In this document: positions 9,416 through 49,151 of the stretch, in pieces
Layout: every line of letters starts with the position of its first letter
Numbering within the stretch: position 1 is the stretch's first letter
IMG/VR virus record: IMGVR_UViG_3300042868_009074
Coordinates: 186,001-250,000 of that record
DNA: 64,000 bases
Reading direction: 5' to 3' (one strand)
Notes under the pieces: model-generated
Told to the model about the DNA's origin: nothing
The model's database searches: none
The model's input: the letters and a program-made list of their open reading frames with translations, nothing else
Program-made: the position numbers and the translations under genes

Positions 9416-10393
9416 ATGGAAGAATCTAAATCACTTGAATTAGCGATTGCCCAACTCGAAAGACAATTTGGAATTGGTGCAGTAATGAAGTTAGGTGCTC
9501 ATACCTCAGAGCCTTGGCCATCAGTGTCAACGGGAGCACCAACGTTAGATAAGATACTAGGGATTGGCGGATTGCCACTAGGTCGTGTTGTAGAAATTTA
9601 TGGACCAGAATCATCTGGCAAATCTACAATTGCACTATCTACAGTAGCACAAGCTCAAAAGCAAGGACTACGTTGTGCATATATAGATGCCGAACATGCG
9701 TTAGATCCAGGTTACATGACTGCACTTGGTGTAGATCTAGATGAACTATTACTTGCGCAACCAGATTACGGCGAGCAAGCATTAGAGATTGTAGATAAGC
9801 TCATTAGGACCGGAGAGGTCGGCCTTATCGTTATAGACTCAGTTGCGGCACTTGTGCCCAAGGCAGAGCTTGAAGGCGATATGGAGGCCAACCAGATGGG
9901 TCTGCAGGCACGTATGATGTCTAAGGCATTACGTAAGATCGTAGCACTTGCTAACGAGCATAAAACTCTTGTTATATTTATTAACCAGCTTCGCATGAAG
10001 ATAGGTATCATGTTTGGTAACCCAGAGACCACTCCTGGTGGTCGAGCACTACCTTACGCAGCATCTGTACGTCTAGATATTCGCAAGAAAGAAGATCTTA
10101 AGGACAAGGCCGGCGATTCAATTGGAATTAAGGTCAAAGCTAAGGTTATCAAGAATAAGATGGCACCCCCACTTAAGGTAACTGAGTTTGATATCTATTA
10201 CGGTAAGGGTGTGGACATGTATGGTTCTTTGTTGGACCTTGGATTCATGTCTGGAATCTTTACACAAAAGGGAGCTTGGGTTTACTATAATGGTGAGATG
10301 TTTTCTCAAGGAAGAGACAACGCCATCAATAAGCTCAAAGAAGACGAGAATGTTTACAAAGAAATTGCTAAGCTTTTAGATTATGAAAGCTGA
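9416..10393 (+). CDS. recA: Recombinase RecA
   Basis: GPESSGKST, IDAEHALDP, VIDSVAALVP, INQLRMKIG, GNPETTPGGRAL, KNKMAPP. Confidence 0.97.
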   Translation: MEESKSLELAIAQLERQFGIGAVMKLGAHTSEPWPSVSTGAPTLDKILGIGGLPLGRVVEIYGPESSGKSTIALSTVAQAQKQGLRCAYIDAEHALDPGYMTALGVDLDELLLAQPDYGEQALEIVDKLIRTGEVGLIVIDSVAALVPKAELEGDMEANQMGLQARMMSKALRKIVALANEHKTLVIFINQLRMKIGIMFGNPETTPGGRALPYAASVRLDIRKKEDLKDKAGDSIGIKVKAKVIKNKMAPPLKVTEFDIYYGKGVDMYGSLLDLGFMSGIFTQKGAWVYYNGEMFSQGRDNAINKLKEDENVYKEIAKLLDYES

Positions 10394-10541
10394 ACAACTA
10401 AAACTAGACCCTTGCCCTGAATGCCCAGTACCAATGAATGTTTTAATAAAACCATTGGCTGTTAAAGAAGGCGAATGTCAAAGCTTTGGAATCTCTTGTA
10501 GAGAGTGTGGCGAAAAATGGACCGAGGAAATAGAAGGTTGA
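10383..10541 (+). CDS. Small zinc-ribbon protein (52 aa)
   Basis: MKAEQLKLDPCPECP...SCRECGEKW; overlaps the recA stop. Confidence 0.6.
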   Translation: MKAEQLKLDPCPECPVPMNVLIKPLAVKEGECQSFGISCRECGEKWTEEIEG

Positions 10542-10542
10542 T

Positions 10543-10683
10543 ATGTCGCTAGCTGGCTTTAGAAAAGTTACTAAAGGCGATGAGAACGGTATAGACCCTT
10601 GGTCAGTAAACTACTACTGGGATGGAGAGAAATGGGTTATCAAGAACTCAGATCAAGATCCACCAGTTGAAGATGTACCCTAA
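10543..10683 (+). CDS. Small hypothetical protein
   Basis: Starts 1 nt after the previous stop (MSLAGFRKV...). Confidence 0.45.
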   Translation: MSLAGFRKVTKGDENGIDPWSVNYYWDGEKWVIKNSDQDPPVEDVP

Positions 10684-10743
10684 GATTAATCCCAACTTTC
10701 CCCGCAAATTTTTTTTGTAATTTTTAAGGTTAATGGAGTCTAT

Positions 10744-11007
10744 CTATTTCTTGCCACGGTTACGGCCACGGTTTATAGCTGGTGACTCTGGGACCATTCT
10801 GCCGTCTTTAGTGTGTGACATGTCTTTGCCACCCTTGCCCATAATCCCACGGCTACGACGTTCAGCTGATAACTCACGACGCTTTGCTAATTGCTCAGGC
10901 TTTGTGTTGAATGCCTTATTATAAGCGTCCTTCTTAGCCTTAGCTGCTGGGTTCTTAGAGTAGAACTGTGAAGATGATCTTGGCTTAGAAGCCTTACGTG
11001 GTGCCAT
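10744..11007 (-). CDS. Small basic protein with HNH-like remnant
   Basis: GKDMSHTKDG...INRGRN; AAGGA RBS. Confidence 0.65.
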   Translation of the reverse strand: MAPRKASKPRSSSQFYSKNPAAKAKKDAYNKAFNTKPEQLAKRRELSAERRSRGIMGKGGKDMSHTKDGRMVPESPAINRGRNRGKK

Positions 11008-11009
11008 TA

Positions 11010-11276
11010 TTACATCCTTAATGAACTTATATCATAGTTCGGATAATTTGAAGCTATATCTCTTGCTGCTGATGTATGAGATGATCCACCTTCTCTCATC
11101 CATTCATATTGTTTCTGAGGGCTAGCTACACTAGTGAAATCACCAGTAACTGTAATACCCTTAGATCTGTTCCTGTAGCTTCTTACGCCTGCTGCTACAC
11201 CCAAAGCTCCCATACCTCCAAGAGCCATTTTACCACCTGCTGATTTAGGTATGAGGCCAAATCTTGCTGAGGACAT
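11010..11276 (-). CDS. Small hypothetical protein with hydrophobic segment
   Basis: AAGGA RBS; MALGGMGALGVAAGV. Confidence 0.65.
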   Translation of the reverse strand: MSSARFGLIPKSAGGKMALGGMGALGVAAGVRSYRNRSKGITVTGDFTSVASPQKQYEWMREGGSSHTSAARDIASNYPNYDISSLRM

Positions 11277-11345
11277 ATATCATTTCCTTGTCATTTTAGT
11301 GTACTATGTTAGTATAGTAAAACCATTTACGGAAAGATAGAACCT

Positions 11346-11639
11346 ATGAGCCTAAACTTTTGGGAACTAATCTATAAGTTCTTTAGTGAAGACCATGATG
11401 AAGGTAAAGATATCGTAGAATATCAGTTTGAGGGTATAGATGACAGTCAATGTGTCATCACTGCTCACAAAGAGGGTGAAAGTGTATTAGTTATTAATCT
11501 CATTGAAATGGATCAATGGGAAATGATTCAAGATATAGCTGATATCACAAACACCCAGATCTCAGATGTAGTTAAAGGATTATCTCCGCAAGAAATCGAT
11601 CAAATACGCCTGGATCTGGGTGAGATGGATTTAGATTAA
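11346..11639 (+). CDS. Acidic hypothetical protein
   Basis: 97 aa ORF, divergent from 11276. Confidence 0.65.
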   Translation: MSLNFWELIYKFFSEDHDEGKDIVEYQFEGIDDSQCVITAHKEGESVLVINLIEMDQWEMIQDIADITNTQISDVVKGLSPQEIDQIRLDLGEMDLD

Positions 11640-12269
11640 CGCCATCTTACCTTTTGTGTCATTAAGGTAAGTCTTTTGATGAATATCGTATAATACGACT
11701 CCATATGCTTCTTGAGCGTAACGTTGTGTGGTTAACGGTGAAATCAATGTTGGAATCAACTGATTCACATGTGCGCAAGCTAATGGTGAGTATTTTAGGC
11801 TCTTGCCGTAGAGATTGTAGATCTTAGTCTTTTTATATACAGACTTAACTGTATTGCCGTATACCTTTTCTTGATCTTCTCGCAAGTTATTGATGAAAAC
11901 CGCCCCATCAAATGTGAAGCCATAATTCACATAGAGATCGAATAACATCTCACAGTCTTGACCATGACCTATAAAGATCTTTTTATTATATCCAGACTCA
12001 AAGCTATTCTTTAAGGACGGATATATCTCATTAGTCTTTTCTATTGAAAGTTTATTATTATTGTATGGTATTAGAGCTATATCATGTTCATTAGCAAATA
12101 ACTTAGTAAAGCTATTGGTAAGGGACTTAGTGAATAGTCTTTCGGATCCTAGGATCAGGTTGTCTTGTGTCTTTAATAGCACTTTTATATCCTTTGATTT
12201 GTTTGGCATTTGATTAATAGTTTCTCTTGTATCAGTAGGATTCTGAGAATCCATAGTTATCTGTGTCAT
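11631..12269 (-). CDS. Hypothetical protein, possibly a degenerate alpha/beta-hydrolase fold
   Basis: IFIGHGQDC resembles a GHSxG elbow without the Ser. Confidence 0.6.
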   Translation of the reverse strand: MTQITMDSQNPTDTRETINQMPNKSKDIKVLLKTQDNLILGSERLFTKSLTNSFTKLFANEHDIALIPYNNNKLSIEKTNEIYPSLKNSFESGYNKKIFIGHGQDCEMLFDLYVNYGFTFDGAVFINNLREDQEKVYGNTVKSVYKKTKIYNLYGKSLKYSPLACAHVNQLIPTLISPLTTQRYAQEAYGVVLYDIHQKTYLNDTKGKMALI

Positions 12270-12450
12270 AGTCTAGGTATCTATCGTTATTTGAGTAACC
12301 ATAGTATACGGAAGCATATGTGTGGGCGTCTTCTATTGGTTCATCAGCATATACGAGACAGTCTGGACAACGTAGTGTTGTTTCAGCTGCGCCTTCATCT
12401 ATTATGAACTCTGATGAGCATTTTGTACAGGTGGTATATTCCATAGTCAT
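12232..12450 (-). CDS. Small zinc-ribbon protein
   Basis: CTKC...RCPDC; AAAGGA RBS. Confidence 0.65.
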   Translation of the reverse strand: MTMEYTTCTKCSSEFIIDEGAAETTLRCPDCLVYADEPIEDAHTYASVYYGYSNNDRYLDYDTDNYGFSESY

Positions 12451-12508
12451 TGGATTCTATCCTTTTGTTTTTTGGGGCGGATCATCGCCTTTGTGGTTAG
12501 TGAGTGAA

Positions 12509-12537
12509 ACATTATCGGTTGATTTGTGGTTTGTCAA
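12509..12537 (-). promoter_or_regulatory. Sigma70-type promoter for the leftward genes
   Basis: TTGACA-17 nt-TAATGT on the minus strand. Confidence 0.45.
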
Positions 12538-12766
12538 CCTAGGTGGGAATATTTGTAAGAAAAATTTTTTGGACTGTAATGATTGTATGTGAACCTATAT
12601 ATACATATATAAAAGTCATATAGGGGAAAAGTTGAGAAAATTTATAAAGGGGTAATAGTATATTATATGTATATGTTTATATCTTTAACATGCCCACCGG
12701 GTCTATGTAGGATATATATATGTTTTAAAGTTTATAATGTCACTATGAGTACTAGGAGGTACCGAC

Positions 12767-12961
12767 ATGTCCCTATTCACACCACTAACACAAGCCGAGT
12801 TCGAGGCTAAGTGCGCTGCAAAGCGTGCGAAAGGCGTATCAGCACGTCAGAAGAACAACGCACAAGTAACTGCAGTAACACAGCAGGTACGCATGCAAGT
12901 AGTACAACCAGCGTTGGGCTACATCACAGCTCGCGACAAGAGCGTCCCTACAACCATCTAG
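12767..12961 (+). CDS. Cassette protein, 64 aa, copy 1
   Basis: AGGAGG RBS; paralogue of 13403-13597 with mostly synonymous or conservative changes. Confidence 0.85.
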   Translation: MSLFTPLTQAEFEAKCAAKRAKGVSARQKNNAQVTAVTQQVRMQVVQPALGYITARDKSVPTTI

Positions 12962-13061
12962 TCTTCGGACTGCTCTGGTCCCTCACTTCCCCGTAAGGGG
13001 GGTGAGGGTTAAAGGAGTATATATCTTTAAATTATAGTATGCTCGTGAAAGGAGTATTATC

Positions 13062-13208
13062 ATGTTTACACTATTAACATCATTGTTCACTATCATCGGA
13101 TTCGCACTCACCAAGGGTGTATGGATCTTCGGTGCGTACACGCTCGTACGTAAGTACGACGTAGTGAACGTAATCAAGGCTCGCGTTCAGGACTCTTCGG
13201 AGTTCTGA
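13062..13208 (+). CDS. Cassette membrane peptide (48 aa)
   Basis: GAAAGGAG RBS; MFTLLTSLFTIIGFALTKGVWIFGAY... Confidence 0.7.
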   Translation: MFTLLTSLFTIIGFALTKGVWIFGAYTLVRKYDVVNVIKARVQDSSEF

Positions 13209-13402
13209 GCGTAAGCTAAGAAAAGGTATATATATTTAAATCTTATAGTGAGCAGCAATGCACACGTGTCGTTAGAGTTTGTATTTAGGAGGAACAATGT
13301 CAGCAACCGTTCAGGTCTAGAGTTGAGGTGTGTTGTTGTTTCAACAATGTTATATATCTTTAAATATTATAGTGTCTCTATTAGTACTTAGGAGGTACAG
13401 AC

Positions 13403-13597
13403 ATGTCATTATTCACACCACTATCACAGGCCGAGTTCGAGGCTGCGTGCGCTGCAAAGCGTGCGAAAGGCGTCCAAGCACGTCAGAAGAACAACGCTGC
13501 AGTCCAGGCTGTATCACAGCAGGTACGTATGCAGGTCATTGCTCCGGCAATGGGTTACATCACGACTCGTGACAAGAGCGTTCCAACAACCATCTAG
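13403..13597 (+). CDS. Cassette protein, 64 aa, copy 2
   Basis: AGGAGG RBS; paralogue of 12767-12961. Confidence 0.85.
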   Translation: MSLFTPLSQAEFEAACAAKRAKGVQARQKNNAAVQAVSQQVRMQVIAPAMGYITTRDKSVPTTI

Positions 13598-13717
13598 TCT
13601 TCGGACTACTCTGGTCCCTCACTTCCCCGTAAGGGGGGTGAGGGTTAAAGGAGTATATATCCTTTAAATCTTATAGTGACGCAAGGAAACCCAAGTACTT
13701 GTATCAGAAAGGTAAAC

Positions 13718-13969
13718 ATGTTTACATTAGCGCAAGTTGACGCACTCATCAACACGGCTATCAGCAAGGGCGATCTGCTCCACTACAACGGTGGTCAGGC
13801 TTACATCCGTTACGGTAACAACGTGATCATCATTGATCATGCTTGTCTTCCAGTAACAATGGAAGTCCACACCGGTGGATGGGCAGAGTCCTACATTGCA
13901 GAAAACCGTGGTGGTGGATACACTCACCACACGTCGCACTTGGCCGAGCTCCATCCGGAACTCGTCTAA
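13718..13969 (+). CDS. Cassette hypothetical protein
   Basis: GAAAGG RBS before MFTLAQVDALI; GCAA-tetraloop hairpin follows. Confidence 0.75.
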   Translation: MFTLAQVDALINTAISKGDLLHYNGGQAYIRYGNNVIIIDHACLPVTMEVHTGGWAESYIAENRGGGYTHHTSHLAELHPELV

Positions 13970-14057
13970 TCGCCAGCCTGTTCCCCCGCAAGGGGGACGG
14001 GCACCAAGGATTATAGTTCTTTAAATTATAGTATGAATTCCATGAAAGGGGATAAAC

Positions 14058-14162
14058 GTGAAGACTTTACGTTCTGCGTACTATGTTACGTACATCGTGT
14101 CAGCGATTCTTTCGTTCGTTGCTTTGGCTTTTGCCTACAAGCATCGCGACGAGATTCTCTGA
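14058..14162 (+). CDS. Cassette membrane peptide (34 aa)
   Basis: GAAAGGGG RBS, GTG start, one hydrophobic helix. Confidence 0.6.
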   Translation: MKTLRSAYYVTYIVSAILSFVALAFAYKHRDEIL

Positions 14163-14455
14163 CCAACCGCTCCGGCTGCCTCTCCCCCAGGCAAGTCGGG
14201 TAAGTCGGTTACTGTTATATATCTTTAGTTTATAGCCCACTATCACGGCTAGCCTATGTCCACATAGTGGGATAGGGTAGGCATAGTGATGTATATATGT
14301 ATGTATGTATTGTACATACCTTTAAATCATAGTATGAGCGATATGCAACTGGGTACCAGAGCTATCGTGGACTTGGTCTTTACTTCCCTTTTGGGAGGTA
14401 GAGACTACTGATTTATATATCTTTAAATTATAGTTTGCTCGTGAAAGGAGTTATT

Positions 14456-14617
14456 ATGTGGACATGTGGACACTGCACTAAGGAAATTGAAGACAAGTAT
14501 GATTACTGTGGATGGTGTGAATACTGTGGATGCACGTTGGATGATCATCGTTGCGTTTGCAAATGTGGTTCTACCGATGTGGAAGATCATGATTGCACTG
14601 GAGTTGGCTCAGCGTAA
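14456..14617 (+). CDS. Cassette Cys-rich peptide
   Basis: GAAAGGAG RBS; CGHC, CGWC, CGC, CVCKC. Confidence 0.7.
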   Translation: MWTCGHCTKEIEDKYDYCGWCEYCGCTLDDHRCVCKCGSTDVEDHDCTGVGSA

Positions 14618-14679
14618 GCTGGGTTAACTTCCCTGATTTATATACCTTTAAATTTCATAGAGAACTTAGGAGGTTCATT

Positions 14680-14850
14680 ATGGCTAAGAAAGCTATTATC
14701 TGTCGGCACTCTATCTGGTCGTTGATTAGCGACGATTCACGTCGTGCACTCATCACCCTCATCGAGGCTAACGTTGAGTTTGCTAATCGTCAGCTCAAGT
14801 TTGAGTTGGTTAATGGTCAGCTCAAGAAGGCCCCAGCGAAAGCTGGGTAA
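14680..14850 (+). CDS. Cassette hypothetical protein (56 aa)
   Basis: AGGAGG RBS; ends KKAPAKAG inside a hairpin. Confidence 0.75.
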   Translation: MAKKAIICRHSIWSLISDDSRRALITLIEANVEFANRQLKFELVNGQLKKAPAKAG

Positions 14851-14907
14851 CCTTCAACTATTTATATATCTTTAAATTATAGTATGTCCCTACAGAATGG
14901 AGATTAC

Positions 14908-15162
14908 ATGTATTACGTGTATCTACGACGTCGTATTGCGGTAGCAGTTGTACTGTTTATCGCCTTTATCCCAGTCATCAAGGTGCTCGTTCAAGAGCCA
15001 CCTGCCGATTGCGACCATGCATTGCATGTTGTTGCAAGAGGCGAGACTATTTGGTCAATCGCACATGCGCATTGCACCTCCGGTATCATCACCGCCATTG
15101 ATCAATTGGTAGATCAGTATGGTGGTGTTATCGATGTCGGTGACCGCATTCAGTTGCCTTGA
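14908..15162 (+). CDS. Membrane-anchored LysM-domain protein
   Basis: YLRRRIAVAVV TM segment, then HVVARGETIWSIA...IDVGDRIQLP. Confidence 0.8.
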   Translation: MYYVYLRRRIAVAVVLFIAFIPVIKVLVQEPPADCDHALHVVARGETIWSIAHAHCTSGIITAIDQLVDQYGGVIDVGDRIQLP

Positions 15163-15488
15163 CCAGGTCAAGTACACTCAGCCTTTTAGGTTGGGTGTAT
15201 TTGGCTATTGTATATATCTTTAAATCTTATAGTGGGAGAGATGGCACAGACAAGACTCATCCCGCTGCAGACGTGCAGTCCGGTTCGTCATGAACTGGGA
15301 TCTTGTTGGTAGTCACTGATCTTACCCGCTTAAGAGCGGTGCAGTGACTATTTACCTAATTGTTATATATCTTTAAATTATAGAGTGAGAAGCAATTGCA
15401 AACCGATGGGGCACTGGACTGCAGTGCATTGTTTCTTATTGTGTATATATCTTTAAATTTTATAGTGTGACTTGTGAAAGGAGTTATT

Positions 15489-15668
15489 ATGTCTAATGTA
15501 GACGAAGACGGACGTGGAGCATGTGTGAAATGTGGTCGTAATCAAGTATTGATTGATGAACTATGTGAAATGTGTGACAATGGGTTCACCCTAAAGGAAA
15601 TCAACATGTTTGAAACATGGTTGGCCGTTGGGGCACCCGGCGAGACCCCCTGGAGTAATCCAGGGTAA
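15489..15668 (+). CDS. Cassette zinc-finger peptide
   Basis: CVKC...CEMC; GAAAGGAG RBS. Confidence 0.7.
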   Translation: MSNVDEDGRGACVKCGRNQVLIDELCEMCDNGFTLKEINMFETWLAVGAPGETPWSNPG

Positions 15669-15764
15669 GTCCGTTGTATTTATACACCTTTAGTCCATAG
15701 TCCACTATCACGCGCAGGGTGATTATATATCTTTAAATACTTTAGTGAACTAAGGAGGTTCATT

Positions 15765-15920
15765 ATGTATTATGATTTTGACAAAGATGCTTGGTATTGT
15801 TCGACTTGTCACATCGATCTCAAGCAGATGGTTATTGACTATGACCCAGATTGTGGTGAATGCGAGTCTGCCATTTACACACTTCTGGTCAGTGGTGATC
15901 ACGACGTTTCGGCGTCGTGA
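15765..15920 (+). CDS. Cassette zinc-finger peptide (51 aa)
   Basis: AAGGAGG RBS; WYCSTC...DCGEC. Confidence 0.7.
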   Translation: MYYDFDKDAWYCSTCHIDLKQMVIDYDPDCGECESAIYTLLVSGDHDVSAS

Positions 15921-16111
15921 TTATCCACTTGTATATATCTTTTAAATTTTATAGTGAGTTGCCAACAAAACCAACCAGCGAAGTGGTTCTTCGGGTCTAG
16001 CACAGCACTAGGCGATAATGCAACTAAGATCTTCGGGAGTCATTCTCCCGAGGATCTATGCTGAAAGGTATATATCTTTAAATTATAGTTCGACTTTTGA
16101 AAGGAGTTATT

Positions 16112-16306
16112 ATGAGATTATTTATTATGCCAGATGGAAAAGGCGAAGGCGTCGATGCTGTGGTCTGTGAACGTTGTATTGAAAATGACTACGACATCAA
16201 CGAGAACAACGGTATGAGTGACCTTGAGCAGCAGCGCTACTTAAACGGGCTCGATGTTGCACCTGCTGCATCGTATTGTTGGTTGTGTGGAGTTGACTCG
16301 GCTTAG
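16112..16306 (+). CDS. Cassette zinc-finger peptide
   Basis: CERC...CWLC; GAAAGGAG RBS. Confidence 0.7.
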   Translation: MRLFIMPDGKGEGVDAVVCERCIENDYDINENNGMSDLEQQRYLNGLDVAPAASYCWLCGVDSA

Positions 16307-16372
16307 GCTGGGTTAACTCTCATGTCTTATATACCTTTAAATACTTATATGAACTCTTGAAAGGAGAACACA

Positions 16373-16606
16373 ATGAAGAATGCGATTTTATTCTTTCGTA
16401 ACATTGGCAATCCACACGGCATGGAATGGCGCAAGATTGGCTGTTTCAACATTTGGGCTTTTAGCGACTGGGCTGATTACGCAGGCTCTGGCTTGCATTG
16501 GAGCACCCATGACCGTTGCCTCGTGTTGAAAACATCCGCGAACAAGCGTAAATCTTGGAAGACCATTACACTTCTGCGTTTGCCCAAGGAAGGGACCTCA
16601 GCTTAG
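16373..16606 (+). CDS. Cassette hypothetical protein
   Basis: GAAAGGAG RBS; 77 aa. Confidence 0.7.
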   Translation: MKNAILFFRNIGNPHGMEWRKIGCFNIWAFSDWADYAGSGLHWSTHDRCLVLKTSANKRKSWKTITLLRLPKEGTSA

Positions 16607-16811
16607 GCTGAGGGACTTTTCCTTGTTTATATATCTTTAAATTTCATAGTGGTAGGCTGTACCGACGGCTATTCGATGGTCGGAGTAAATGGTGGGTCAA
16701 CACAGCGCAGGCTCCATCAGCTGGGTACCAGAAAGCTCAGAACGTTTATCGTTCTGGGTTTTTCTATTATTATATATCTTTAAATTTCATAGCGAACTAA
16801 GGAGGTTCAAC

Positions 16812-16970
16812 ATGTTTGTTACTAACTGTCCTCGTTGCGGGCAACTTGCGCCTGACTTTGAGAGTCCATCACATCAAGACGAATGGTGTTTTCATCATCG
16901 TTTGAATGGATTTGGCGAAGTCGTTGTTTCTGACGACGATTACCAGTCATCGGACGACGAGCCCTTTTAG
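16812..16970 (+). CDS. Cassette peptide with CPRC motif
   Basis: AAGGAGG RBS before MFVTNCPRCG. Confidence 0.7.
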   Translation: MFVTNCPRCGQLAPDFESPSHQDEWCFHHRLNGFGEVVVSDDDYQSSDDEPF

Positions 16971-17029
16971 GGTTCGTTGTTTGAGCTTTATATATCTTTA
17001 AATTTCATAGTGACCTAAGGAGGTTCATT

Positions 17030-17371
17030 ATGGCAACAACGCCATCCGTCACATCCCTACTATTACAACAGGAAGATTTGCAAACGCAAATTGATTCTGT
17101 TGACAGCAAGATTGCTGCGCTTCATCAGACCATGAAGGAGTGCGAGTCTCAAATCAACGCTTATGAGCAGGACCGTAAGCGTCTTGATTATTTGACTTGG
17201 GAGATTCAGAAGGCTTTGGCCAAGGCTGTCTGCCCTACTAACCAAGTTCTTCTTCGGTTCTCTAGTACTCTCAACGCTCTTCGGAATCCTGACCATCCGA
17301 GCTATGGAGCACTAGCGATTGACCAACGCTTTGCAGCCCTTGGCTTTACTCAGTCTTCTTCGGAAGGCTGA
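17030..17371 (+). CDS. Cassette coiled-coil protein
   Basis: AAGGAGG RBS; heptad pattern. Confidence 0.8.
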   Translation: MATTPSVTSLLLQQEDLQTQIDSVDSKIAALHQTMKECESQINAYEQDRKRLDYLTWEIQKALAKAVCPTNQVLLRFSSTLNALRNPDHPSYGALAIDQRFAALGFTQSSSEG

Positions 17372-17425
17372 GTTTAGCTGGATTATATATCTTTAAATTA
17401 TAGTGGGACGAAAGGAGTCATCATC

Positions 17426-17614
17426 ATGAATGACTGGGTAACACCAAAAATGGTGGACCAAGCTTTAGACTTTGCAGAACTACATCAACGTTCAAACAAG
17501 TTTTGTCGTGCAATGTTTCTGACCTTCAGGGCTAAGGGTAACTTGTCTGACAAGCAGGTTCTCAAGCTGTTGGAAATCAAAGCTGGTTACCGCCGCAGTG
17601 CTCGAGCTTCTTAG
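17426..17614 (+). CDS. Cassette hypothetical protein
   Basis: GAAAGGAG RBS; GNLSDKQV motif. Confidence 0.75.
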   Translation: MNDWVTPKMVDQALDFAELHQRSNKFCRAMFLTFRAKGNLSDKQVLKLLEIKAGYRRSARAS

Positions 17615-17867
17615 CTCGGGTTACTGTGGTCTTTATATATATCTTTAGCTTATAGTTGTCGTCCACTATCACGCGCCAGCTTGTATGCACATAGTGCTAT
17701 ACAGATGGTGTAGTGATTATACTGTGTGTATATCTTTAAATCTTATAGTGCCGACTGGAGTTGTAACAAGGACTGTCCGGGCACACAAGGATTGCATCTC
17801 TGACGAGAGATGTAGTCTTGTATCTATATAGATCTTTAAATGTCATAGTGTCCTTAGGAGGTACACT

Positions 17868-18020
17868 ATGTCCGCTATTTGCGCACGTTGTCGCTTGGAA
17901 AGCAACAACATCACACCACAGTCCATCGACCACATCCGTGGTCATTACGCAGCATTCCATGCTGCTTCGTCGAAGCCTCGCAAGGCTCGTGCGAAGAAGG
18001 CCCCAGCGAAAGCTGGGTGA
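17868..18020 (+). CDS. Cassette basic peptide (50 aa)
   Basis: AGGAGG RBS; MSAICARC...KKAPAKAG. Confidence 0.7.
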   Translation: MSAICARCRLESNNITPQSIDHIRGHYAAFHAASSKPRKARAKKAPAKAG

Positions 18021-18332
18021 CCTTCAACCGTTTATATGTCTTTAGTTTATATCTATAGTCTCACGTTTCAGGGATTGGAAACCAGTGAACTAAGTGAATA
18101 GTATGAGGAGTCCGCGAACGATTGTCCTACTGAACGCTGTAATAGTATCTTATATATGTTTATATATATGTTGGAGCAATGTCTTAGACTTGATCAGGCA
18201 TAGTTATTTTGCCGGCAAACAATTACGTCTATATTATTAATAGACATATATCTTAAGTTTTAATATTATATTATTCTAAATTTTCAAATAGGGACCCAAT
18301 CCGTGGGTTTCTTGTAGTAGTTTGGAGAAACT

Positions 18333-18758
18333 ATGAAAGTCCGTATCAACGCTCTTGCTTCTGGCAAGGGCTCAACTCAGCAAGCACCAATCCAAAAGCG
18401 TTCCGCTGATGGTCAACGCTTCGCTTTCTTGGTTAGCATTATGGATGCTACCAACACTGTACCAGTCGACCTTCGTTTCGACTCGGTTGCCTCTGATGGC
18501 GTCAAGTACCAGAACTTCTCTGGTGCGTATGAACTCTGGTTTTCAGCAGAAGAGAACTCTGAGATTGTTTCTCGGTTCAACACAGCAAAGGCTTCTGGCC
18601 AAGTTGTGTACTATGAGTTCACTTGCTTGACCGCTGACAAGTCTGTCCCCTATCTCTCTGAGAAGGGTGTCACTTATCAGACCATCATCCTGAATGCTGA
18701 CCGCTTTGCGGAACGCATTTGCGGTTTGGCACCAGTGCCCGCCATCAAGTTCGTTTGA
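18333..18758 (+). CDS. Hypothetical beta-rich protein
   Basis: GGAG RBS; 141 aa; hairpins downstream. Confidence 0.75.
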   Translation: MKVRINALASGKGSTQQAPIQKRSADGQRFAFLVSIMDATNTVPVDLRFDSVASDGVKYQNFSGAYELWFSAEENSEIVSRFNTAKASGQVVYYEFTCLTADKSVPYLSEKGVTYQTIILNADRFAERICGLAPVPAIKFV

Positions 18759-19452
18759 TGAGATTTGCCACCAAGTTCTCTTGGTGAAGACACCAGTCTG
18801 GTCACTTCGGTGACTAGGCTGTGTGTAACCCCCTCTATATATCCTTAGGTTTGATTTCACCTAGCACTGATCCGCTGAAACAATCCTTGTGTCCTACCTT
18901 GTGTAGTTGTGTACTGACGAGTACATTACTACATTAGGTAACACTCGTACCTACATAGATTCTAAATCTATAATCGATCTCAAGTTCTCTGGGGTTGGGC
19001 CCCCAGTTAGATGATTGCAGGTATCATATCGATATCTTTAGCCCGTTGTCCCGCTTTAAGGCATTTCCATTTGGATTTGCCGGCCAGGCAACAAAAGCAA
19101 ACATATGATAGTTTGGTAGATACCTACGGCTGATTGCCAAGAAACTACCCTTTTCGTTAGTATAAGTATACTTATCCCCTAATGTATCTATAGCAATATA
19201 TATATTATTGTTGGACAAATGCTTATATTAATATCTCTCAGGGGTATACCCATTATAAAACTATGCATATGTAACCTGCCAAGGTGTTATGCATTTGGGT
19301 ATACTAGACACGGCAAATGTAAGTATACCCAATATGGGAGATTATCTCCCCCTATATTAGGTGTCTCTATACTCTCTTATTCCTTTCTAGAGTATATGAT
19401 ATACCCCTGAGAATATTCGTGTTCGTTGGTTTTGCCGGCGAACCACAAGATT

Positions 19453-19734
19453 TCTTAAGAAGAGTCTGTATAGCGAGTCTGTAACTGATTAGACTAAAAC
19501 CCGATTGAGTTACCCTTAAGTTTCCAATTGAGAAGTGCCTAATCAAGTGCCACTTTAGCCGAGACTACAGAACTGTCTCTTTGAGACTATGGTTGATACG
19601 AAATCCCGTGATAACCTCTGCGAACGAATGCATTACCCTGGTTCAATTGTTGGATTGTACAATCCCAACCCAGCGTATGTTAGCCATCTAGTACCCATTG
19701 TTATCCTTGCAAAATAGGACCAATCTTCTTAAGA
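19453..19734. ncRNA. Candidate ~280-nt structured RNA
   Basis: 11-bp terminal stem TCTTAAGAAGA/TCTTCTTAAGA, nested stem ATGGTTGATACG/CGTATGTTAGCCAT, no ORF. Confidence 0.5.
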
Positions 19735-28336: not shown

Positions 28337-29212
28337 ATGCGCATACTACGAGTGATAATATTAATATTAACAATGCTAGTAACATCTGTTGTTGTTAGCT
28401 CTGCTGCTGGTGCAGCAACTGGAGGCGTCTCGGAGCTTTCTTCCGAGCCCCGAAGTACCACCCTACTCAGTACTCCTACTAAGTGGAAGTCCGTCGAATT
28501 TAAGATGGGACCTTCTATTAAGTACTGGACTAAAGTAGCCCAATGCGAGACTCGCCAGGACTGGCAAGACGGTGGCAACTGGGGTGGTGGACTTGGCATA
28601 GCTAAATCCACATGGCAAGGATATGGTGGCAAAGAGTTTGCATCTCATCCTTCCAAAGCGACTGTTCTTGAACAGATCGTAGTGGCTAACAGAATTGCAG
28701 TGTTTGGCTACCAAACAAAGAATGAGTTTATGACTGTCGAAGACAGAACTAATAACACACCATTCTTTAGACCAGCTGTTGGCTTTAATGGTTGGGGCTG
28801 TATTAAAAATAATACTTACCTCAAACCTAAAAAAGACACAGTTCTTAAAGTTAAACTTCCTGTAGGTAAAGAATTTTACTGTCCACAGTTTGAAGATACT
28901 TTTAAGAAGTATGCCCTGCCACACAAAGTGTTTTCTTATATCGCTTGGCGTGAATCTAGGTGTAATCCTGGAGCCGTCAATGCTAAATGGGAAAACGGGC
29001 ATATAGTCTGGACCCTCAACTCTAACGGTTCATACGACTCAGGTCTGCTCCAAATCAACTCTTCATGGTTTAAAACATTAAGAGAACAATTTGGTTATGC
29101 CCCTGACGATCTAATGACACCAGCAGTCAATGCTTTATTCGCCAGTTGGATTCTCCACTTCTCTAGTGGCAGACTTAGAAACTGGAATGTTAAAGCTACT
29201 TCTGTACGCTAG
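28337..29212 (+). CDS. Secreted dual lytic transglycosylase: Rpf-like domain plus SLT-like domain
   Basis: Signal peptide; WTKVAQCET...GGGLGIAKSTWQGYGG...ATVLEQIVVA (Rpf); IAWRESRCNPGAVN...DSGLLQINSSW (SLT). Confidence 0.85.
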   Translation: MRILRVIILILTMLVTSVVVSSAAGAATGGVSELSSEPRSTTLLSTPTKWKSVEFKMGPSIKYWTKVAQCETRQDWQDGGNWGGGLGIAKSTWQGYGGKEFASHPSKATVLEQIVVANRIAVFGYQTKNEFMTVEDRTNNTPFFRPAVGFNGWGCIKNNTYLKPKKDTVLKVKLPVGKEFYCPQFEDTFKKYALPHKVFSYIAWRESRCNPGAVNAKWENGHIVWTLNSNGSYDSGLLQINSSWFKTLREQFGYAPDDLMTPAVNALFASWILHFSSGRLRNWNVKATSVR

Positions 29213-37336: not shown

Positions 37337-38569
37337 ATGTCTATTCTAGTATCTGAACTAGATCTTCCTTATGTACCACCTAAACTTATTAAATCTGATT
37401 TAACAACTTATGATCAATTTAAAATTGGTTTAGAAGCTCATAAGCAAAACTGGATTGGCACAACAAAACTTTCTTATGTGATTTTAGACCACAAGCATTC
37501 TGCTGCTATGTTGAAAGACAAGAGATGGCACAATGGTTTGTATTTATTAAGCGAACTTAATCCTCATTTTACTGAAGAGATTAAGATGAGTAGGAAAAAA
37601 TTAATAATTAACTTAGAAGGCGAAGATCATTCAAGACTCAGAAAGATAATTGCTCCAGTTTTTTCACCAAAGACAGCTGAGCTTCTTCGACCAGACATGC
37701 AAGATGCTATCAATCAAGTTCTTAATGATGTCATCGAAAGCGGTCAATGCGATTTGCAAAAAGATGTATTCAACAAGTATCCATCATACATTATCTCTAA
37801 GATAGTAGGAGTCCCCAATTCAGATTGGGAGAAGTTTAGTCAATGGGCTGATGATACCTTCAAAACATTTGGTGGAAACTTTGAACACCATAGCGAAGTT
37901 ATATTAAATACTCAAAATGAATTAGATCAATATACTAATAATTTAATCATCAGCAAAAAAGAAAACAAAGGCAATGACCTTGTTTCTATGTTAATTGACG
38001 CAGAATTTGATGGTCAAAAATTATCAGATCAAGAAATACAATCTCTTATCCAAGTAGTTCTGATGGCAGGCATGGATACGACTAGAGCACAGCTTGGTCT
38101 TATAGCAGTTATGCTATCTGAGAGACCAGATTTAATATCGATGTTAGCCAATGATTTAAATGTTGAAGATATAATAGAAGAGTCTACTCGCTTAGATTCT
38201 GTTTTTAAATATGTAATGAGAATTGCTTCAGAAGACATTGAATACAATGGAGTCTTATTCCCTAAGGGAACAATTATCTCCCCAGCATTGGGTGTTAATA
38301 ATTACGATGACTTAGCTTTTGAAAACGCATCTGAATTTATTCTTGATCGTAAAGCAACAAAGGGCATTACCCTGTCTTATGGTGGTGGAATTCATTACTG
38401 TCTCGGTGCTTCTTTAGCACGAGCTCAAATGCAGGAATGTATGAAAGTTGTTGCAAAAAGAATGCCAGATTATAAAATTACTGGAGAAGTTCTTTATAAA
38501 GAAGCTTACGAATCAGTAGTCGGTCCAAGATCTATCCCTGTGACTTTTACACCTAACATTAAGATTTGA
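37337..38569 (+). CDS. Cytochrome P450
   Basis: HSRLRK, I-helix AGMDTT, ExxR (EESTR), heme motif YGGGIHYCLGASLAR. Confidence 0.95.
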   Translation: MSILVSELDLPYVPPKLIKSDLTTYDQFKIGLEAHKQNWIGTTKLSYVILDHKHSAAMLKDKRWHNGLYLLSELNPHFTEEIKMSRKKLIINLEGEDHSRLRKIIAPVFSPKTAELLRPDMQDAINQVLNDVIESGQCDLQKDVFNKYPSYIISKIVGVPNSDWEKFSQWADDTFKTFGGNFEHHSEVILNTQNELDQYTNNLIISKKENKGNDLVSMLIDAEFDGQKLSDQEIQSLIQVVLMAGMDTTRAQLGLIAVMLSERPDLISMLANDLNVEDIIEESTRLDSVFKYVMRIASEDIEYNGVLFPKGTIISPALGVNNYDDLAFENASEFILDRKATKGITLSYGGGIHYCLGASLARAQMQECMKVVAKRMPDYKITGEVLYKEAYESVVGPRSIPVTFTPNIKI

Positions 38570-47450: not shown

Positions 47451-49151
47451 ATGTCTAATAAAATTAAAGAACCAGTTACTCTAGATGATCTAGACTACTT
47501 CTGGATGACTAACGGAGCACCATGTTTTATGGCTGACCGTGAAGACATCTGTGAAGTAGTTGAGTCTCTAGGTTTTCAGATCTATTACTTAATCGCTGAT
47601 CTTGCAATTAATAAAGAAGTTAAAGGCAAAGATAAACAATTTAAAGAAATTACGTGGATTGAGACTACTCATAAAGCCCGAGTTCTTAAAGTTGTTAATA
47701 ACATTATTGGTCGTTCTGTTTCAGAAACAGATGATGAATTTGGACAAGACATTCTTTCTTCAGTAGAAGAATCTGCAACATACAACATGCCAAAGATTCC
47801 TAAAGTTATTGTTAAAAAGTTAGACGAGTTCTTTAGATTAGTGCACGCTCAGCACGGCACCGAGTCTATAGTCATCTTAACTTTTGATCCTAATGTAAAC
47901 ACATCTGATGGTTGGGGTGTCTTGGTTCCTGAACAGACTAATACTCCAGCACACTGCAAGTATGACGCTGAGTCCATTGTTGATCTTAAACCTGACCATG
48001 TAATCATTGTTGGCTCAGTCCACAGTCATCCTGAGATGGCAGCATACGCCTCTGGGACCGATCATGAGGACCAAGCAGACTTCGATGGGGTCCACATCAC
48101 CTACGGCTGGATGAAGACCAAGAACGGTGGAGCTACTGAGTATCATGCAGAGATGCAAATGAACGGTACTGCTTATCTTTTGAATATTGAAGATGTCTTT
48201 GAAGACACTACTGAAATTAAAGATCCAGATCCTCAAGTTGTTGAATGGTCCGGCAAAGTAAAAAAAGTATCCCCCCCGCCGTACAAAGCGGGGGTTACAC
48301 CACAGGCTACCCAAGCCCTGCCAACTGGTCAGGCTCAGGGTCTAGTGTCGGGACATACGGGCACTACTGGGATTAACTATTACGGTGGACGTTCTGTTCC
48401 ATCTCGTAAGCAAACAATCCCTTTTCAAATGGATGAATACGATGGTCAACTCGTTGCCGAGATTGACACTTCTTCAAATGTTTCAATGACCTGTCCTTCT
48501 TGTGAACTATATCTATTTAAAGCAGACGTTGAAGGACATGGCTTTTGTCCAGCTTGTGACATCCCATTAGCTCCTAAAAATGCTTCTCTTAAATCTATTG
48601 AATTTGCAGTTAATTATCATCTTGTCAATCGTTCTAAAGAAACAGGATGTGCCTATTACCTTTGGTGTAAAGACGATAAGAATGAAAACTTTCTTATTCA
48701 AATTAAACCAGATGAATTAGATAGTCGTGACATTTCAATCGGTTCTAGAATAGATGAATTCGAAGAGTATGGTGATGCTGATCAAGCTGGCTTATCTCTT
48801 CTTAAAGAATCAGATGGCTTGTTCTTTTATGCAGAAGACGTAACATTATGTTGTGCGTGTCCTGCTGACAGAGCATGGACTGAATGCAAGTGTGCACCTA
48901 CGGTTTACTGGGAAGACATTGAAAGATTTGAAATAGCAGCAAACAATACAGAAAAATATGTTGCTGATTCAATTTGTCAAACATGTGCTTTCTATTGTCT
49001 TCCTGAATGTGATTCTTATAGAAACAACATTATTGAATTTATTTCTACACAACAGTTGCCATCCAAAGCAATAGATGGCTGTGATTCTTGGGTTGATTTT
49101 TCCAAGGTTGCTAACGATATAGATAGCGGTATTTATGACACATACAGATAA
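47451..49151 (+). CDS. JAB/MPN metalloisopeptidase (PRTRC A-like) with C-terminal zinc fingers
   Basis: GTESIV (catalytic E), VPEQ, GSVHSHPEMAAYASGTD (HxH-x7-S-x2-D), DGVHITYG. Confidence 0.9.
   Translation: MSNKIKEPVTLDDLDYFWMTNGAPCFMADREDICEVVESLGFQIYYLIADLAINKEVKGKDKQFKEITWIETTHKARVLKVVNNIIGRSVSETDDEFGQDILSSVEESATYNMPKIPKVIVKKLDEFFRLVHAQHGTESIVILTFDPNVNTSDGWGVLVPEQTNTPAHCKYDAESIVDLKPDHVIIVGSVHSHPEMAAYASGTDHEDQADFDGVHITYGWMKTKNGGATEYHAEMQMNGTAYLLNIEDVFEDTTEIKDPDPQVVEWSGKVKKVSPPPYKAGVTPQATQALPTGQAQGLVSGHTGTTGINYYGGRSVPSRKQTIPFQMDEYDGQLVAEIDTSSNVSMTCPSCELYLFKADVEGHGFCPACDIPLAPKNASLKSIEFAVNYHLVNRSKETGCAYYLWCKDDKNENFLIQIKPDELDSRDISIGSRIDEFEEYGDADQAGLSLLKESDGLFFYAEDVTLCCACPADRAWTECKCAPTVYWEDIERFEIAANNTEKYVADSICQTCAFYCLPECDSYRNNIIEFISTQQLPSKAIDGCDSWVDFSKVANDIDSGIYDTYR

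What the first reader, a model, noticed from the sequence alone, without database searches (positions are those of the whole stretch)
14600..18030. Unrelated cassette genes share identical 3' ends: evidence of part-swapping
Seen: ORFs 14680-14850 and 17868-18020 are unrelated but both end AAGAAGGCCCCAGCGAAAGCTGGGT(A/G)ACCTTCAAC (KKAPAKAG*). ORFs 14456, 16112 and 16373 all end ...SA* inside the hairpin CTC(A/G)GC-(GTAA/TTAG)-GCTG(G/A)G, and the first two continue GTTAACT. Inference: coding ends and terminators are exchanged as modules, and the hairpin supplies the last codons and the stop. This could be a route for de novo gene birth.
Basis: partly seen in the sequence, partly recalled or inferred. 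Interest (0 to 1): 0.6.

Follow-up and report, generated by a model that had tools for sequence, protein, structure and literature searches.

The report
Shuffled phage mini-genes sharing hairpin-encoded ends
In an uncultured 268-kb lake phage, about 27 tiny self-contained genes sit in a row, each ending in an RNA hairpin that also encodes the protein's last few residues and stop codon, and recombination at these repeated hairpin-promoter joints has shuffled genes and grafted identical tails onto unrelated proteins, a variant of the "PeSL" cassettes known from T4-type phages.

Summary
The last 24 coding nt of ORFs 14680-14850 and 17868-18020 are identical (average for ORF pairs in the array is 7.2 of 24), yet the proteins are unrelated (BLASTP E=52). 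The shared block is 58 nt at 90% identity and runs on through a hairpin and spacer into the next promoter.

The region 12640-18100 is an array of about 27 units, each made of a promoter motif, a short leader, a small ORF or non-coding RNA, and a hairpin. Eleven of 16 ORFs stop inside their hairpin.

Related lake-metagenome contigs carry the same units in different numbers and orders. At least six ORF families have alternative tails. The same hairpin family is also read in a second frame or left untranslated. Its 14-bp stem covaries strongly (93.8% paired, 9 of 14 pairs with double changes, 0 of 500 shuffles as high) while the encoded tails change. Distant homologues of ORF 14680 lack the KKAPAKAG tail.

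A 636-bp cassette deletion with its crossover inside a junction is polymorphic in lake samples.

So module exchange, and hairpins supplying the last codons and the stop, are supported. De novo gene birth is not shown. The closest known system is the PeSL terminator-promoter cassette of T4-type phages. This phage is not detectably T4-like, its promoter is not sigma-70-like, and its hairpins lie inside coding sequence.

The parts
12640..18100 (+). Whole array: about 27 promoter-headed mini transcription units, about 16 with SD plus an ORF of 34-113 aa and about 10 short non-coding
   Evidence: Motif TATATCTTTAAAT (2 mismatches or fewer): 39 hits against 8.8 expected, clustered here on the + strand. 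Unit table. In the complete 268-kb genome the motif occurs only in this array.
14456..14617 (+). u9 ORF (53 aa, Cys-rich), ends ..GVGSA; stop TAA lies in the GTAA loop
   Evidence: Homologues in L033, L034 and L036 end ..DVDPA..EVDPA and ..EVDLA.
14600..14631 (+). u9 terminal hairpin, 14-bp stem
   Evidence: dG -21.4, z -3.6. Flagged as terminator-like.
14680..14850 (+). u10 ORF (56 aa), ends KKAPAKAG
   Evidence: Homologues. Homology to distant relatives stops at residue 42.
14824..14881 (+). Shared 3' module, copy 1: last 8 codons, two-tier GAAA hairpin (14826-14855), spacer, next promoter
   Evidence: 58 nt, 90% identical to 17994-18051 (D6). Fold dG -18.8. Alignment A5.
16112..16306 (+). 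u18 ORF (64 aa), ends ..GVDSA; stop TAG lies in the TTAG loop
   Evidence: The L030 homologue ends ..AGINPA with a compensated stem.
16289..16320 (+). u18 terminal hairpin, 14-bp stem
   Evidence: dG -22.7, z -5.6. Terminator-like.
16373..16606 (+). u19 ORF (77 aa), ends ..EGTSA; stop TAG lies in the TTAG loop of hairpin 16585-16625
   Evidence: Homologues end ..GETSA, a tail also carried by the unrelated ORF L033:1733-1894.
16812..16970 (+). u21 ORF (52 aa). Its last 17 codons plus hairpin plus junction (16917-17009) form a mobile 3' block
   Evidence: 98% identical over 93 nt to L036:11751-11843, while the two ORF bodies align only weakly.
17426..17614 (+). u23 ORF (62 aa), ends ..RSARAS; stop lies in the loop of hairpin 17592-17630
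   Evidence: The ORF at about L036:12201-12374 has a different-looking body but the same ..RRARAS tail and hairpin.
17868..18020 (+). u26 ORF (50 aa), ends KKAPAKAG; likely donor of the tail
   Evidence: All homologues found keep KK(A/V)PAKAG. GCC to GTC covaries with TGA to TAA.
17994..18051 (+). Shared 3' module, copy 2: hairpin 17996-18025, spacer, degenerate promoter
   Evidence: About 52 nt identical to the junction after the diverged u10 homologue L033:280-426.
12753..13031 (+). Paralogous unit u1 (ORF 12767-12961) with its double-hairpin junction
   Evidence: 86% identical to 13389-13667 (D1; alignment A1).
13389..13667 (+). Paralogous unit u4 (ORF 13403-13597) with the same junction
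12973..13608 (+). 636-bp block (u2, u3, u4) that is present or absent in the population; the crossover lies within 53 identical nt of the junction
   Evidence: A contig in run X16 joins 12972 to 13609 at depth 8.6, while the skipped part has depth of about 2 or less. The IMG/VR contig behind L011 has the same join. L026 shows u1 followed by u5, with no u3 or u4.
9416..10393 (+). Phage RecA-type recombinase; candidate enzyme for the exchanges (inference)
   Evidence: phrog_97, E=3.6e-85. About 55% identical to RecA proteins.

Best explanation
The region is a hyperplastic array of autonomous mini-genes, probably early genes, in an uncultured 268-kb freshwater phage. Each unit consists of a conserved promoter motif, one of two short leader/SD modules, a small ORF or a small structured RNA, and a long tetraloop hairpin. 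The hairpin, together with the T/A-rich start of the next promoter, forms a composite terminator-promoter junction. The hairpin begins inside the upstream ORF, so the last 3-10 codons and the stop codon are hairpin sequence. These junctions are short repeats along the array. Homologous or microhomology-mediated recombination between them, probably by the phage's own RecA and replication machinery, deletes, duplicates, permutes and replaces units. When a crossover falls at or upstream of the 5' arm, the recipient ORF inherits the donor's last codons, stop, hairpin and downstream promoter. That is why unrelated proteins end identically. For the KKAPAKAG pair the likely event is that the 14680 family, whose distant homologues continue ..KKA plus about 18 more residues, recombined at the AAGAAGGC microhomology with the junction of the 17868 family.

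Shown: the architecture; the shared blocks; the covariation, which points to an RNA-level structure on the + strand; alternative tails and frames; different unit order among relatives; a deletion polymorphism with its crossover in a junction.

Inferred: promoter and terminator activity; which polymerase reads the promoters; the recombination enzyme; the direction of the KKAPAKAG transfer.
For: Architecture.

Hairpins: stable and significant. Terminator-like sites number 12 against 4.3 +/- 2.1 expected, all on the + strand.

Shared blocks: they span tail, hairpin, spacer and promoter (D4 and D6). Stop-anchored identity is 24 of 24 against a mean of 7.2. The proteins are unrelated.

RNA-level selection: in 15 hairpins from different ORF families the 14-bp stem is 93.8% paired, 9 of 14 pairs carry double-sided changes, 0 of 500 shuffles reach this, and slid controls give 30-58%. 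G.U pairs are abundant, so the structure matters on the sense transcript rather than as a DNA cruciform. Meanwhile the tails read GVGSA, GVDSA, EGTSA, GETSA, GDDSA, INPA, EVNPA, DVDPA, KYIA and KCIA.

Other frames: the same hairpin class is read in a second frame (L028:1411-1566 and L036:10683-10838, ending ..LKPD and ..RKLD), or is untranslated (after L028:1151-1327 and after L033:1034-1216).

Same ORF, different tails: the u10 family, u9, u18, the 40/43-aa family (GVDPA versus GVQA on different hairpins), the 37/39-aa family, and u2.

Sharp mosaic boundaries: the diverged L033 u10 homologue is identical to the window's u26 junction over about 52 nt. In the L036 chimeric unit the leader module is 98% identical to u18, and identity to u21 jumps from weakly alignable to 98% over the last 93 nt.

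Unit order and number differ among contigs, including MEGAHIT k141 and JGI assemblies. L036 holds a complete array about half the size.

Population polymorphism: a 636-bp deletion with its crossover in the junction.

The ORFs are genuine coding sequence (dN/dS 0.1-0.75). RecA lies 2.3 kb away.

Published precedent for terminator-promoter cassettes driving such shuffling: PMC2839356, PMC4122927.
Against: There are no RNA data: none of the 24 runs that hold the region is on record as RNA. Promoter, terminator and 3'-end roles are therefore inferred from position and form. Most hairpins are followed by a T/A-rich tract only after 0-8 nt, so they are not textbook intrinsic terminators.

The motif does not fit the sigma-70 two-hexamer consensus (13 sites against 12.4 expected), and no RNA polymerase or sigma factor was recognised in the phage. 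The reading polymerase is unknown.

All relatives are metagenomic contigs. Repeats of 50-58 nt can mislead k=31 assemblies; the key contigs L028, L033 and L034 (k141) and L036 (JGI) are less exposed to this. The L011 join lies about 100 nt from a contig end.

The hairpins in alignment A4 were chosen because the inner 6 bp pair. Only the outer 8 pairs are unbiased evidence.

The direction of the KKAPAKAG transfer rests on not having found tail-less homologues of the 17868 family. The word-based search that would have found them has limited reach.
Confidence: 0.75

Rival explanations
1. Convergence. Each ORF evolved its own terminal hairpin in place. The hairpins resemble each other only because the terminator or an RNA-binding factor demands a particular sequence, such as the GC-UUAG-GC top. 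No exchange of parts occurred.
For: The loop and the two closing G-C pairs are invariant or nearly so in 15 hairpins, while the stems vary. This suggests functional constraint on the top of the hairpin. The u9/u18/u19 similarity inside coding sequence is modest (14 of 24).
Against: Identity extends beyond anything a hairpin needs. It covers the spacer, the lower-stem flanks and the downstream promoter variant: 58 nt for u10/u26, and 55 nt including the rare TATACC promoter form for u9/u18. About 52 nt are identical between a diverged u10 homologue and another phage's u26 junction. A 93-nt block is 98% identical next to a body that is only weakly alignable. Unit order differs between relatives.
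Confidence: 0.07
2. Protein-level function. The shared tails are functional peptide motifs kept by selection on the protein: a basic KKAPAKAG nucleic-acid-binding tail, or C-terminal ..SA/..PA signals for proteolysis or localisation. The hairpin would be incidental.
For: KK(A/V)PAKAG is kept in every homologue found of the 17868 family, where it continues a basic stretch (..KPRKARAKK..). It is also retained in all array copies of the 14680 family. From my own knowledge, not tested here: Lys/Ala/Pro-rich tails occur in bacterial nucleoid proteins.
Against: Nucleotide identity is complete at synonymous sites and continues into non-coding DNA. In the TTAG class the residues change freely while base pairing is kept. 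The one Ala-to-Val change in the KKAPAKAG tail covaries with the stop codon across the stem. The same hairpins occur untranslated and in another frame. Distant homologues of ORF 14680 work without the tail.
Confidence: 0.1
3. Site-specific mobile cassettes. The hairpins are recombination sites in the manner of integron attC sites or small palindromic mobile elements, moved by a dedicated recombinase rather than by general recombination.
For: The hairpin top is conserved. ORFs end inside the hairpin, as integron cassette ORFs often end inside attC (my own knowledge). Cassette gain and loss is seen among relatives.
Against: No tyrosine recombinase was found in the complete 268-kb genome, and no recombinase domain in the neighbouring ORFs that were scanned. 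Every unit carries its own promoter. Abundant G.U pairs point to an RNA structure on one strand. Crossovers map to different places (junction hairpin region, promoter core, inside ORFs) rather than one site. The hairpin core is not dispersed in the genome.
Confidence: 0.05

Closest known systems
PeSL (promoter-early stem-loop) regulatory cassettes of T4-type phages (Arbiol et al. 2010, PMC2839356; Comeau et al. 2014, PMC4122927)
   Same: A composite stem-loop plus promoter lies between small ORFan genes, concentrated in a hyperplastic region. [quoted passage not shown] Each unit is transcriptionally self-contained.
   Different: The phage is not detectably T4-like: no gp23 or gp20 match, although those two searches had no working positive control. 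The promoter motif is not a sigma-70 -35/-10 pair. [quoted passage not shown] About a third of the units are non-coding. The stems are 12-17 bp tetraloop hairpins rather than G-run/C-run stems. Mini-circles were not tested.
Intrinsic terminators that overlap the 3' end of coding sequence
   Same: A GC-rich hairpin is followed by a T-rich tract and overlaps the last codons. There are 12 terminator-like sites against 4.3 expected.
   Different: Here the T-rich tract is the 5' half of the next promoter and often starts a few nt after the stem. The hairpins form sequence families shared between unrelated genes. Termination itself is untested.
Palindromic repeat elements inside genes (Rickettsia palindromic elements, REP/MITE-like repeats) and integron attC sites (comparison from my own knowledge)
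   Same: A repeated palindromic element contributes codons or a stop to otherwise unrelated ORFs.
   Different: These hairpins occur only at unit ends within one 5.5-kb array. They always come with a promoter. No integrase was found. The evidence favours general recombination between repeats rather than transposition or site-specific insertion.

Membership tests
PeSL cassettes (T4-type phages) | Composite element: a stable stem-loop immediately upstream of a conserved promoter, repeated between small ORFs | tested here: met
   About 27 junctions have a hairpin 0-15 nt upstream of the motif.
PeSL cassettes (T4-type phages) | The promoter is a strong sigma-70-like -35/N17/-10 early promoter | tested here: not met
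   The two-hexamer scan is not enriched: 13 sites against 12.4 +/- 4.4 expected. The conserved block sits directly upstream of a TATAGT-like hexamer, and no conserved -35 lies at 16-18 nt.
PeSL cassettes (T4-type phages) | The host genome is a T4-type myovirus | tested here: inconclusive
   No Gp23 (PF07068) or T4 portal (PF07230) match in the complete 268-kb genome. The control genomes cannot ring for these families, so absence is not proven.
PeSL cassettes (T4-type phages) | [quoted passage not shown] | tested here: not met
   Eleven of 16 ORFs have their stop inside the hairpin; the 5' arm is coding sequence.
PeSL cassettes (T4-type phages) | Indels, replacements and displacements between related phages have breakpoints in the elements | tested here: met
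PeSL cassettes (T4-type phages) | Measured promoter and terminator activity; excised mini-circles | not testable with these tools
   This needs reporter fusions and inverse PCR on infected cells. No RNA runs hold the region.
Rho-independent terminator | GC-rich stem-loop followed directly by a U-tract | tested here: inconclusive
   Twelve sites pass a simple scan against 4.3 expected, all on the + strand. Several hairpins, including the GAAA-loop pair, have the T-rich tract only 5-8 nt downstream.
Integron gene cassettes (attC) | An IntI tyrosine recombinase and promoterless cassettes | tested here: not met
   No PF00589 match in the 268-kb genome, with a positive control in 14 of 14 genomes. 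Every unit has its own promoter motif.
Known RNA families (Rfam 15) | A match at or above the gathering score | tested here: not met
   There are only two sub-threshold chance-level hits, E 0.21 and 0.98.

The most novel reading that the evidence does not exclude
The stop-in-hairpin design may be a regulatory device rather than only a by-product of compaction and recombination. A ribosome reaching the stop codon in the loop or 3' arm would melt the terminator, so translation of each mini-gene would decide read-through into the next. The invariant GC-UUAG-GC top would be recognised by a dedicated phage or host factor. The array would be read from a new class of -35-less promoters by an unidentified polymerase or a modified host polymerase. 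It would act as a nursery in which hairpin-derived codons and some of the roughly 10 non-coding units are recruited into new small proteins.
Probability: 0.12. Interest if true: 0.7.

Novelty: new variant of a known kind. Interest (0 to 1): 0.45.

Why it matters
This is a clear natural example of how regulatory RNA structure and recombination together write protein sequence. The C-terminal residues of a dozen or more small phage proteins are dictated by base pairing: compensatory stem changes appear as amino-acid changes, and one sense codon covaries with a stop codon. Whole tails are transplanted between unrelated genes along with the terminator and the next promoter.

It extends PeSL-type modular shuffling beyond T4-type phages and beyond sigma-70 promoters, to an abundant uncultured freshwater jumbo phage lineage seen in 24 lake studies.

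It also has a practical consequence. In such arrays, shared C-termini and sharp identity jumps should not be read as protein homology or as functional motifs.

The array offers a compact set of about 27 candidate promoters, two leader modules and about 20 hairpins for testing how mini-genes are insulated.

Tried and rejected
- Nucleotide search of the array against 50,697 phage records found no match. The phage has no sequenced close relative there.
- IMG/VR scans with two flanking proteins, the promoter pattern and the hairpin pattern found only the same phage (a 268-kb contig, identical over window 11001-19500) and one short variant contig.
- Rfam found nothing above threshold for the hairpins or the non-coding units.
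- PHROGs and Pfam scans of the cassette proteins gave only a borderline LysM hit in ORF 14908-15162 (19.8 bits, cut-off 20.9) and coiled-coil noise in ORF 17030-17371.
- I looked for the polymerase that reads the motif. T7-type RNAP, the multisubunit beta subunit and sigma-70 region 2 were all absent by Pfam. The T7-type search had no working control, and very divergent jumbo-phage polymerases would be missed, so this stays open.
- The integron idea is rejected: no tyrosine recombinase.
- The dispersed REP/MITE idea is rejected: motif and hairpin core occur only in the array.
- The idea that the tails reflect distant paralogy of the ORFs is rejected for u10/u26 and u9/u18 by BLASTP. It is not fully excluded for the several small Cys-rich (zinc-ribbon-like) ORFs that end ..PA or ..SA.
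- RNA evidence was sought, but none of the 24 holder runs is RNA.
- One call failed on a mistyped frame, one on a bad search term, and one script used start coordinates off by one or two; it was corrected with the ORF listing.
- Not used: the large representative protein search, structure prediction and complex prediction; the question did not need them. No alternative genetic code was used.

Full report
WHAT THE WINDOW IS

The window is part of an IMG/VR virus record (104 kb). Over 11001-19500 it is identical to a 267,766-bp contig that CheckV rates as complete. Twenty-four lake-water metagenome studies hold the array region.

The genome encodes a RecA-type recombinase (9416-10393), helicases, proteases, four tRNAs, a cytochrome P450 and an Rpf/SLT-type transglycosylase. 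It has no nucleotide relative among 50,697 phage records. No T4 capsid or portal match was found (those two searches had no working control).

CHECK OF THE OBSERVATION

- ORFs 14680-14850 (u10 in my numbering) and 17868-18020 (u26) both end KKAPAKAG.
- With all 16 array ORFs aligned at their stop codons, this pair is 24 of 24 identical in the last 24 coding nt. The mean over 120 pairs is 7.2, and body controls give about 6.5.
- The two proteins are unrelated (BLASTP E=52).
- The shared block is longer than reported: 14824-14881 against 17994-18051, 58 nt at 90%. It covers the tail, a two-tier GAAA-tetraloop hairpin, the spacer and the start of the next promoter (D6).
- ORFs 14456 (u9), 16112 (u18) and 16373 (u19) end ..SA with the stop codon in a GTAA or TTAG loop.
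- u9 and u18 share 55 nt at 84%, including a rare promoter variant with C in place of T (D4). Their proteins are unrelated (E=3.2).

ANATOMY

Between about 12640 and 18100 there are about 27 copies, all on the + strand, of a motif: TATATCTTTAAAT, then 0-3 nt, then a TATAGT-like hexamer. In the complete 268-kb genome the motif occurs only here.

Each copy heads a unit of 80-400 nt.
- About 16 units have a strong Shine-Dalgarno sequence and an ORF of 34-113 aa.
- About 10 units are short, structured and non-coding.

Two leader/SD modules are shared by unrelated ORFs, with up to 21 of 24 nt identical before the ATG. Identity drops to background just after the ATG (D5, D9 and D12).

Every ORF unit ends in a 12-17 bp hairpin with a GNRA, UUCG or UUAG-type loop (dG -17 to -27 kcal/mol; z -3.6 to -7.3). 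By my reading of the folds, 11 of 16 ORFs have their stop codon inside this hairpin, as follows.
- In the loop: u9, u18, u19, u21, u23.
- In a 3' internal loop: u10, u14, u26.
- In the 3' arm: u2, u16, u22.

The T/A-rich 5' half of the next promoter follows 0-15 nt later. A simple scan finds 12 terminator-like sites against 4.3 +/- 2.1 expected, all on the + strand. Sigma-70-type two-hexamer promoters are not enriched (13 against 12.4).

RELATIVES

Word-based protein searches with u10 and u26, look-ups of the contigs that encode the hits and one metagenome pattern scan gave array fragments from related phages: L026-L035, plus one complete smaller array, L036 at about 9830-12700 with roughly 13 units. 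They use the same promoter motif.

A more distant group (L019-L025) has homologues of u10 and u5 but a different upstream repeat.

Orthologous ORFs between arrays have dN/dS of 0.1-0.75, so they are genuine coding genes.

EVIDENCE THAT ENDS ARE EXCHANGED AS MODULES

(a) Same ORF family, different tails.
- u10 family: array copies end KKAPAKAG. Five distant homologues share residues 1-42 and then continue ..KKA/KKS plus about 18 other residues, ending ..FFGL.
- u9 family: GVGSA in the window; DVDPA, EVDPA or EVDLA in relatives.
- u18: GVDSA against AGINPA.
- A 40/43-aa family: GVDPA on a TTAG hairpin against GVQA on a GTAA hairpin.
- A 37/39-aa family: EVNPA against VEIDPA.
- u2: two unrelated hairpins.

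(b) Same tail module, different ORF families.
- KKAPAKAG on u10 and u26.
- GETSA on two adjacent unrelated ORFs of L033.
- The ..(D/N)PA module on at least four families.

(c) Sharp mosaic boundaries.
- The diverged u10 homologue L033:280-426 aligns poorly with window u10 in its body. From GAAGAAGG onward it is identical over about 52 nt to the window's u26 junction, up to the promoter core, after which it continues as the u11 promoter.
- The unit around L036:11619-11804 has u18's promoter and leader (98% identical) and a body only weakly alignable to window u21. It then matches u21's last 17 codons, hairpin and junction at 98% over 93 nt.
- The ORF at about L036:12201-12374 has a different-looking body but keeps u23's RRARAS tail and hairpin.

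(d) Unit order and content differ between contigs, including MEGAHIT k141 and JGI assemblies. The right end, u19-u22-u23-u26-u27, is syntenic; the rest is permuted, gained or lost.

(e) Polymorphism within the window's own population.
- A contig in run X16 joins 12972 to 13609, skipping 636 nt (u2-u4), with 53 nt that fit both sides. Its depth is 8.6, while the skipped part has depth of about 2 or less.
- The IMG/VR contig behind L011 has the same join, with the crossover mapped to the junction and promoter core.

EVIDENCE THAT THE HAIRPIN, NOT THE PEPTIDE, IS SELECTED

Fifteen TTAG-class hairpins from different ORF families align without gaps. For a 14-bp stem:
- 93.8% of cells pair;
- 9 of 14 pairs show changes on both sides;
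- no shuffle out of 500 reaches the observed values;
- sliding the partner by 1-3 columns drops pairing to 30-58%.

The inner 6 bp were a selection criterion, so the outer 8 pairs carry the independent signal. G.U pairs are common, which fits an RNA structure on the sense strand rather than a DNA cruciform.

The encoded residues vary freely. Two orthologous ORFs read the same hairpin class in a second frame and stop in the 3' arm (..GLIRLKPD and ..ELIRRKLD). Two hairpins of the class lie downstream of ORFs that have already stopped.

In the u26 family the only tail substitution, Ala to Val (GCC to GTC), pairs across the stem with the change of stop codon from TGA to TAA (C:G to U:A). In u5 a coding hairpin just before the stop shows three compensated versions, which read ELHPEL, KLHPQF and ELHPQF.

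MECHANISM

The best explanation is a PeSL-like system. Terminator-promoter junctions insulate mini-genes. Being short repeats, they also serve as portable homology for general recombination. The phage RecA is a candidate enzyme; that is an inference.

Because the stems reach into the ORFs, crossovers at or before the 5' arm transplant last codons, stop, hairpin and next promoter together.

For KKAPAKAG, the ancestral ..KKA of the u10 family offers an AAGAAGGC microhomology with the u26 tail. I infer that u26 was the donor, because every u26 homologue found has the tail and distant u10 homologues lack it.

Promoter and terminator activities, the polymerase and the enzyme are inferred, not shown. 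No RNAP or sigma factor was recognised in the phage, and no RNA runs exist for this region.

COMPARISON WITH KNOWN SYSTEMS

PeSLs of T4-type phages (PMC2839356, PMC4122927) are the closest match. They are composite stem-loop plus early promoter elements. They flank ORFans in hyperplastic regions. Their breakpoints fall in the elements, and the units are transcriptionally insulated.

The differences are these:
- the promoter is not sigma-70-like;
- the phage is not detectably T4-like;
- the stem-loops lie inside coding sequence, whereas PeSLs are defined from stop codon to ATG, so exchange rewrites protein ends;
- many units are non-coding.

Integron-type and dispersed palindromic-element models fail their defining tests.

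VERDICT

It is a new variant of a known kind. It is of moderate interest as an unusually clear case of RNA structure and recombination shaping protein C-termini in an abundant uncultured phage lineage.

Noticed in passing
window 16650-16768 (unit u20): A non-coding unit ending in a classical terminator (stem plus a T-run). It is 100% identical over 107 nt to L033, while the flanking ORFs are only 76-83% identical. That makes it a candidate conserved small RNA. There is no Rfam match.
   Followed up: partly
window 14218-14312, 15682-15725, 17638-17728 (units u7, u15, u24): A family of short non-coding units with a variant promoter (TCTTTAG instead of TCTTTAAAT), followed by a hairpin whose arms are CACTATCAC and GTGATAGTG-like. 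It is conserved in L028 and L036 (alignment A6).
   Followed up: partly
window 13229-13352, 14315-14415, 15213-15445, 15934-16070, 17729-17828: Further promoter-headed units without a credible SD-led ORF. They fold stably (z about -3 to -3.8). About a third of the array may encode small RNAs rather than proteins.
   Followed up: partly
window 12652-12685 and 18139-18172: A direct repeat of about 34 nt (79% identical), beginning GTAATAGTAT and running into a TATATGTTTATAT-like stretch, brackets the whole array. It is also present at both ends of the smaller array in L036. It could be boundary promoters or a mark of the array as a block.
   Followed up: no
window 14416-14458, 15446-15491, 16071-16114 versus 14641-14682, 15726-15767, 16773-16814, 16991-17032: Two leader/SD modules (an ..GAAAGGAGTTATTATG type and a GAACTAAGGAGGTTCATTATG type) are shared by unrelated ORFs. 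Gene 5' ends are therefore modular too. In the second type, GAAC and GTTC flank the SD and could pair.
   Followed up: partly
window 14774-14826 and 14497-14532: In-frame tandem duplications inside small ORFs: a 27-nt repeat in u10 (..EFANRQLKF / ELVNGQLKK..) and an 18-nt repeat in u9. The diverged u10 homologue in L033 has its own version of the repeat.
   Followed up: no
window 13940-13969 (end of ORF 13718-13969); L026:1804-2055; L036:10161-10412: A hairpin wholly inside coding sequence just before the stop shows three compensated versions, which translate as ELHPEL, KLHPQF and ELHPQF. Here the amino-acid changes follow RNA pairing.
   Followed up: partly
whole 268-kb genome (G001) and window 12000-18000: The promoter motif occurs only in this 5.5-kb array. 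No RNA polymerase or sigma factor was recognised in the phage. The array has a higher GC content (42-44%) than most of the window (31-41%).
   Followed up: partly
window 37337-38569, 28337-29212, 47451-49151: Unusual cargo for a phage: a cytochrome P450 (E=9e-25), a protein with an Rpf-type transglycosylase-like domain plus an SLT domain, and a JAB-domain protein. The Rpf-type domain may hint at an actinobacterial host.
   Followed up: no
L019 5250-6000 (also L020-L025): A more distant phage group shares u10 and u5 homologues but places them behind a different repeated upstream element (..CAAAGTAAAGGGG.., preceded by a small hairpin). The mini-gene layout may be older than the particular promoter motif.
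   Followed up: no
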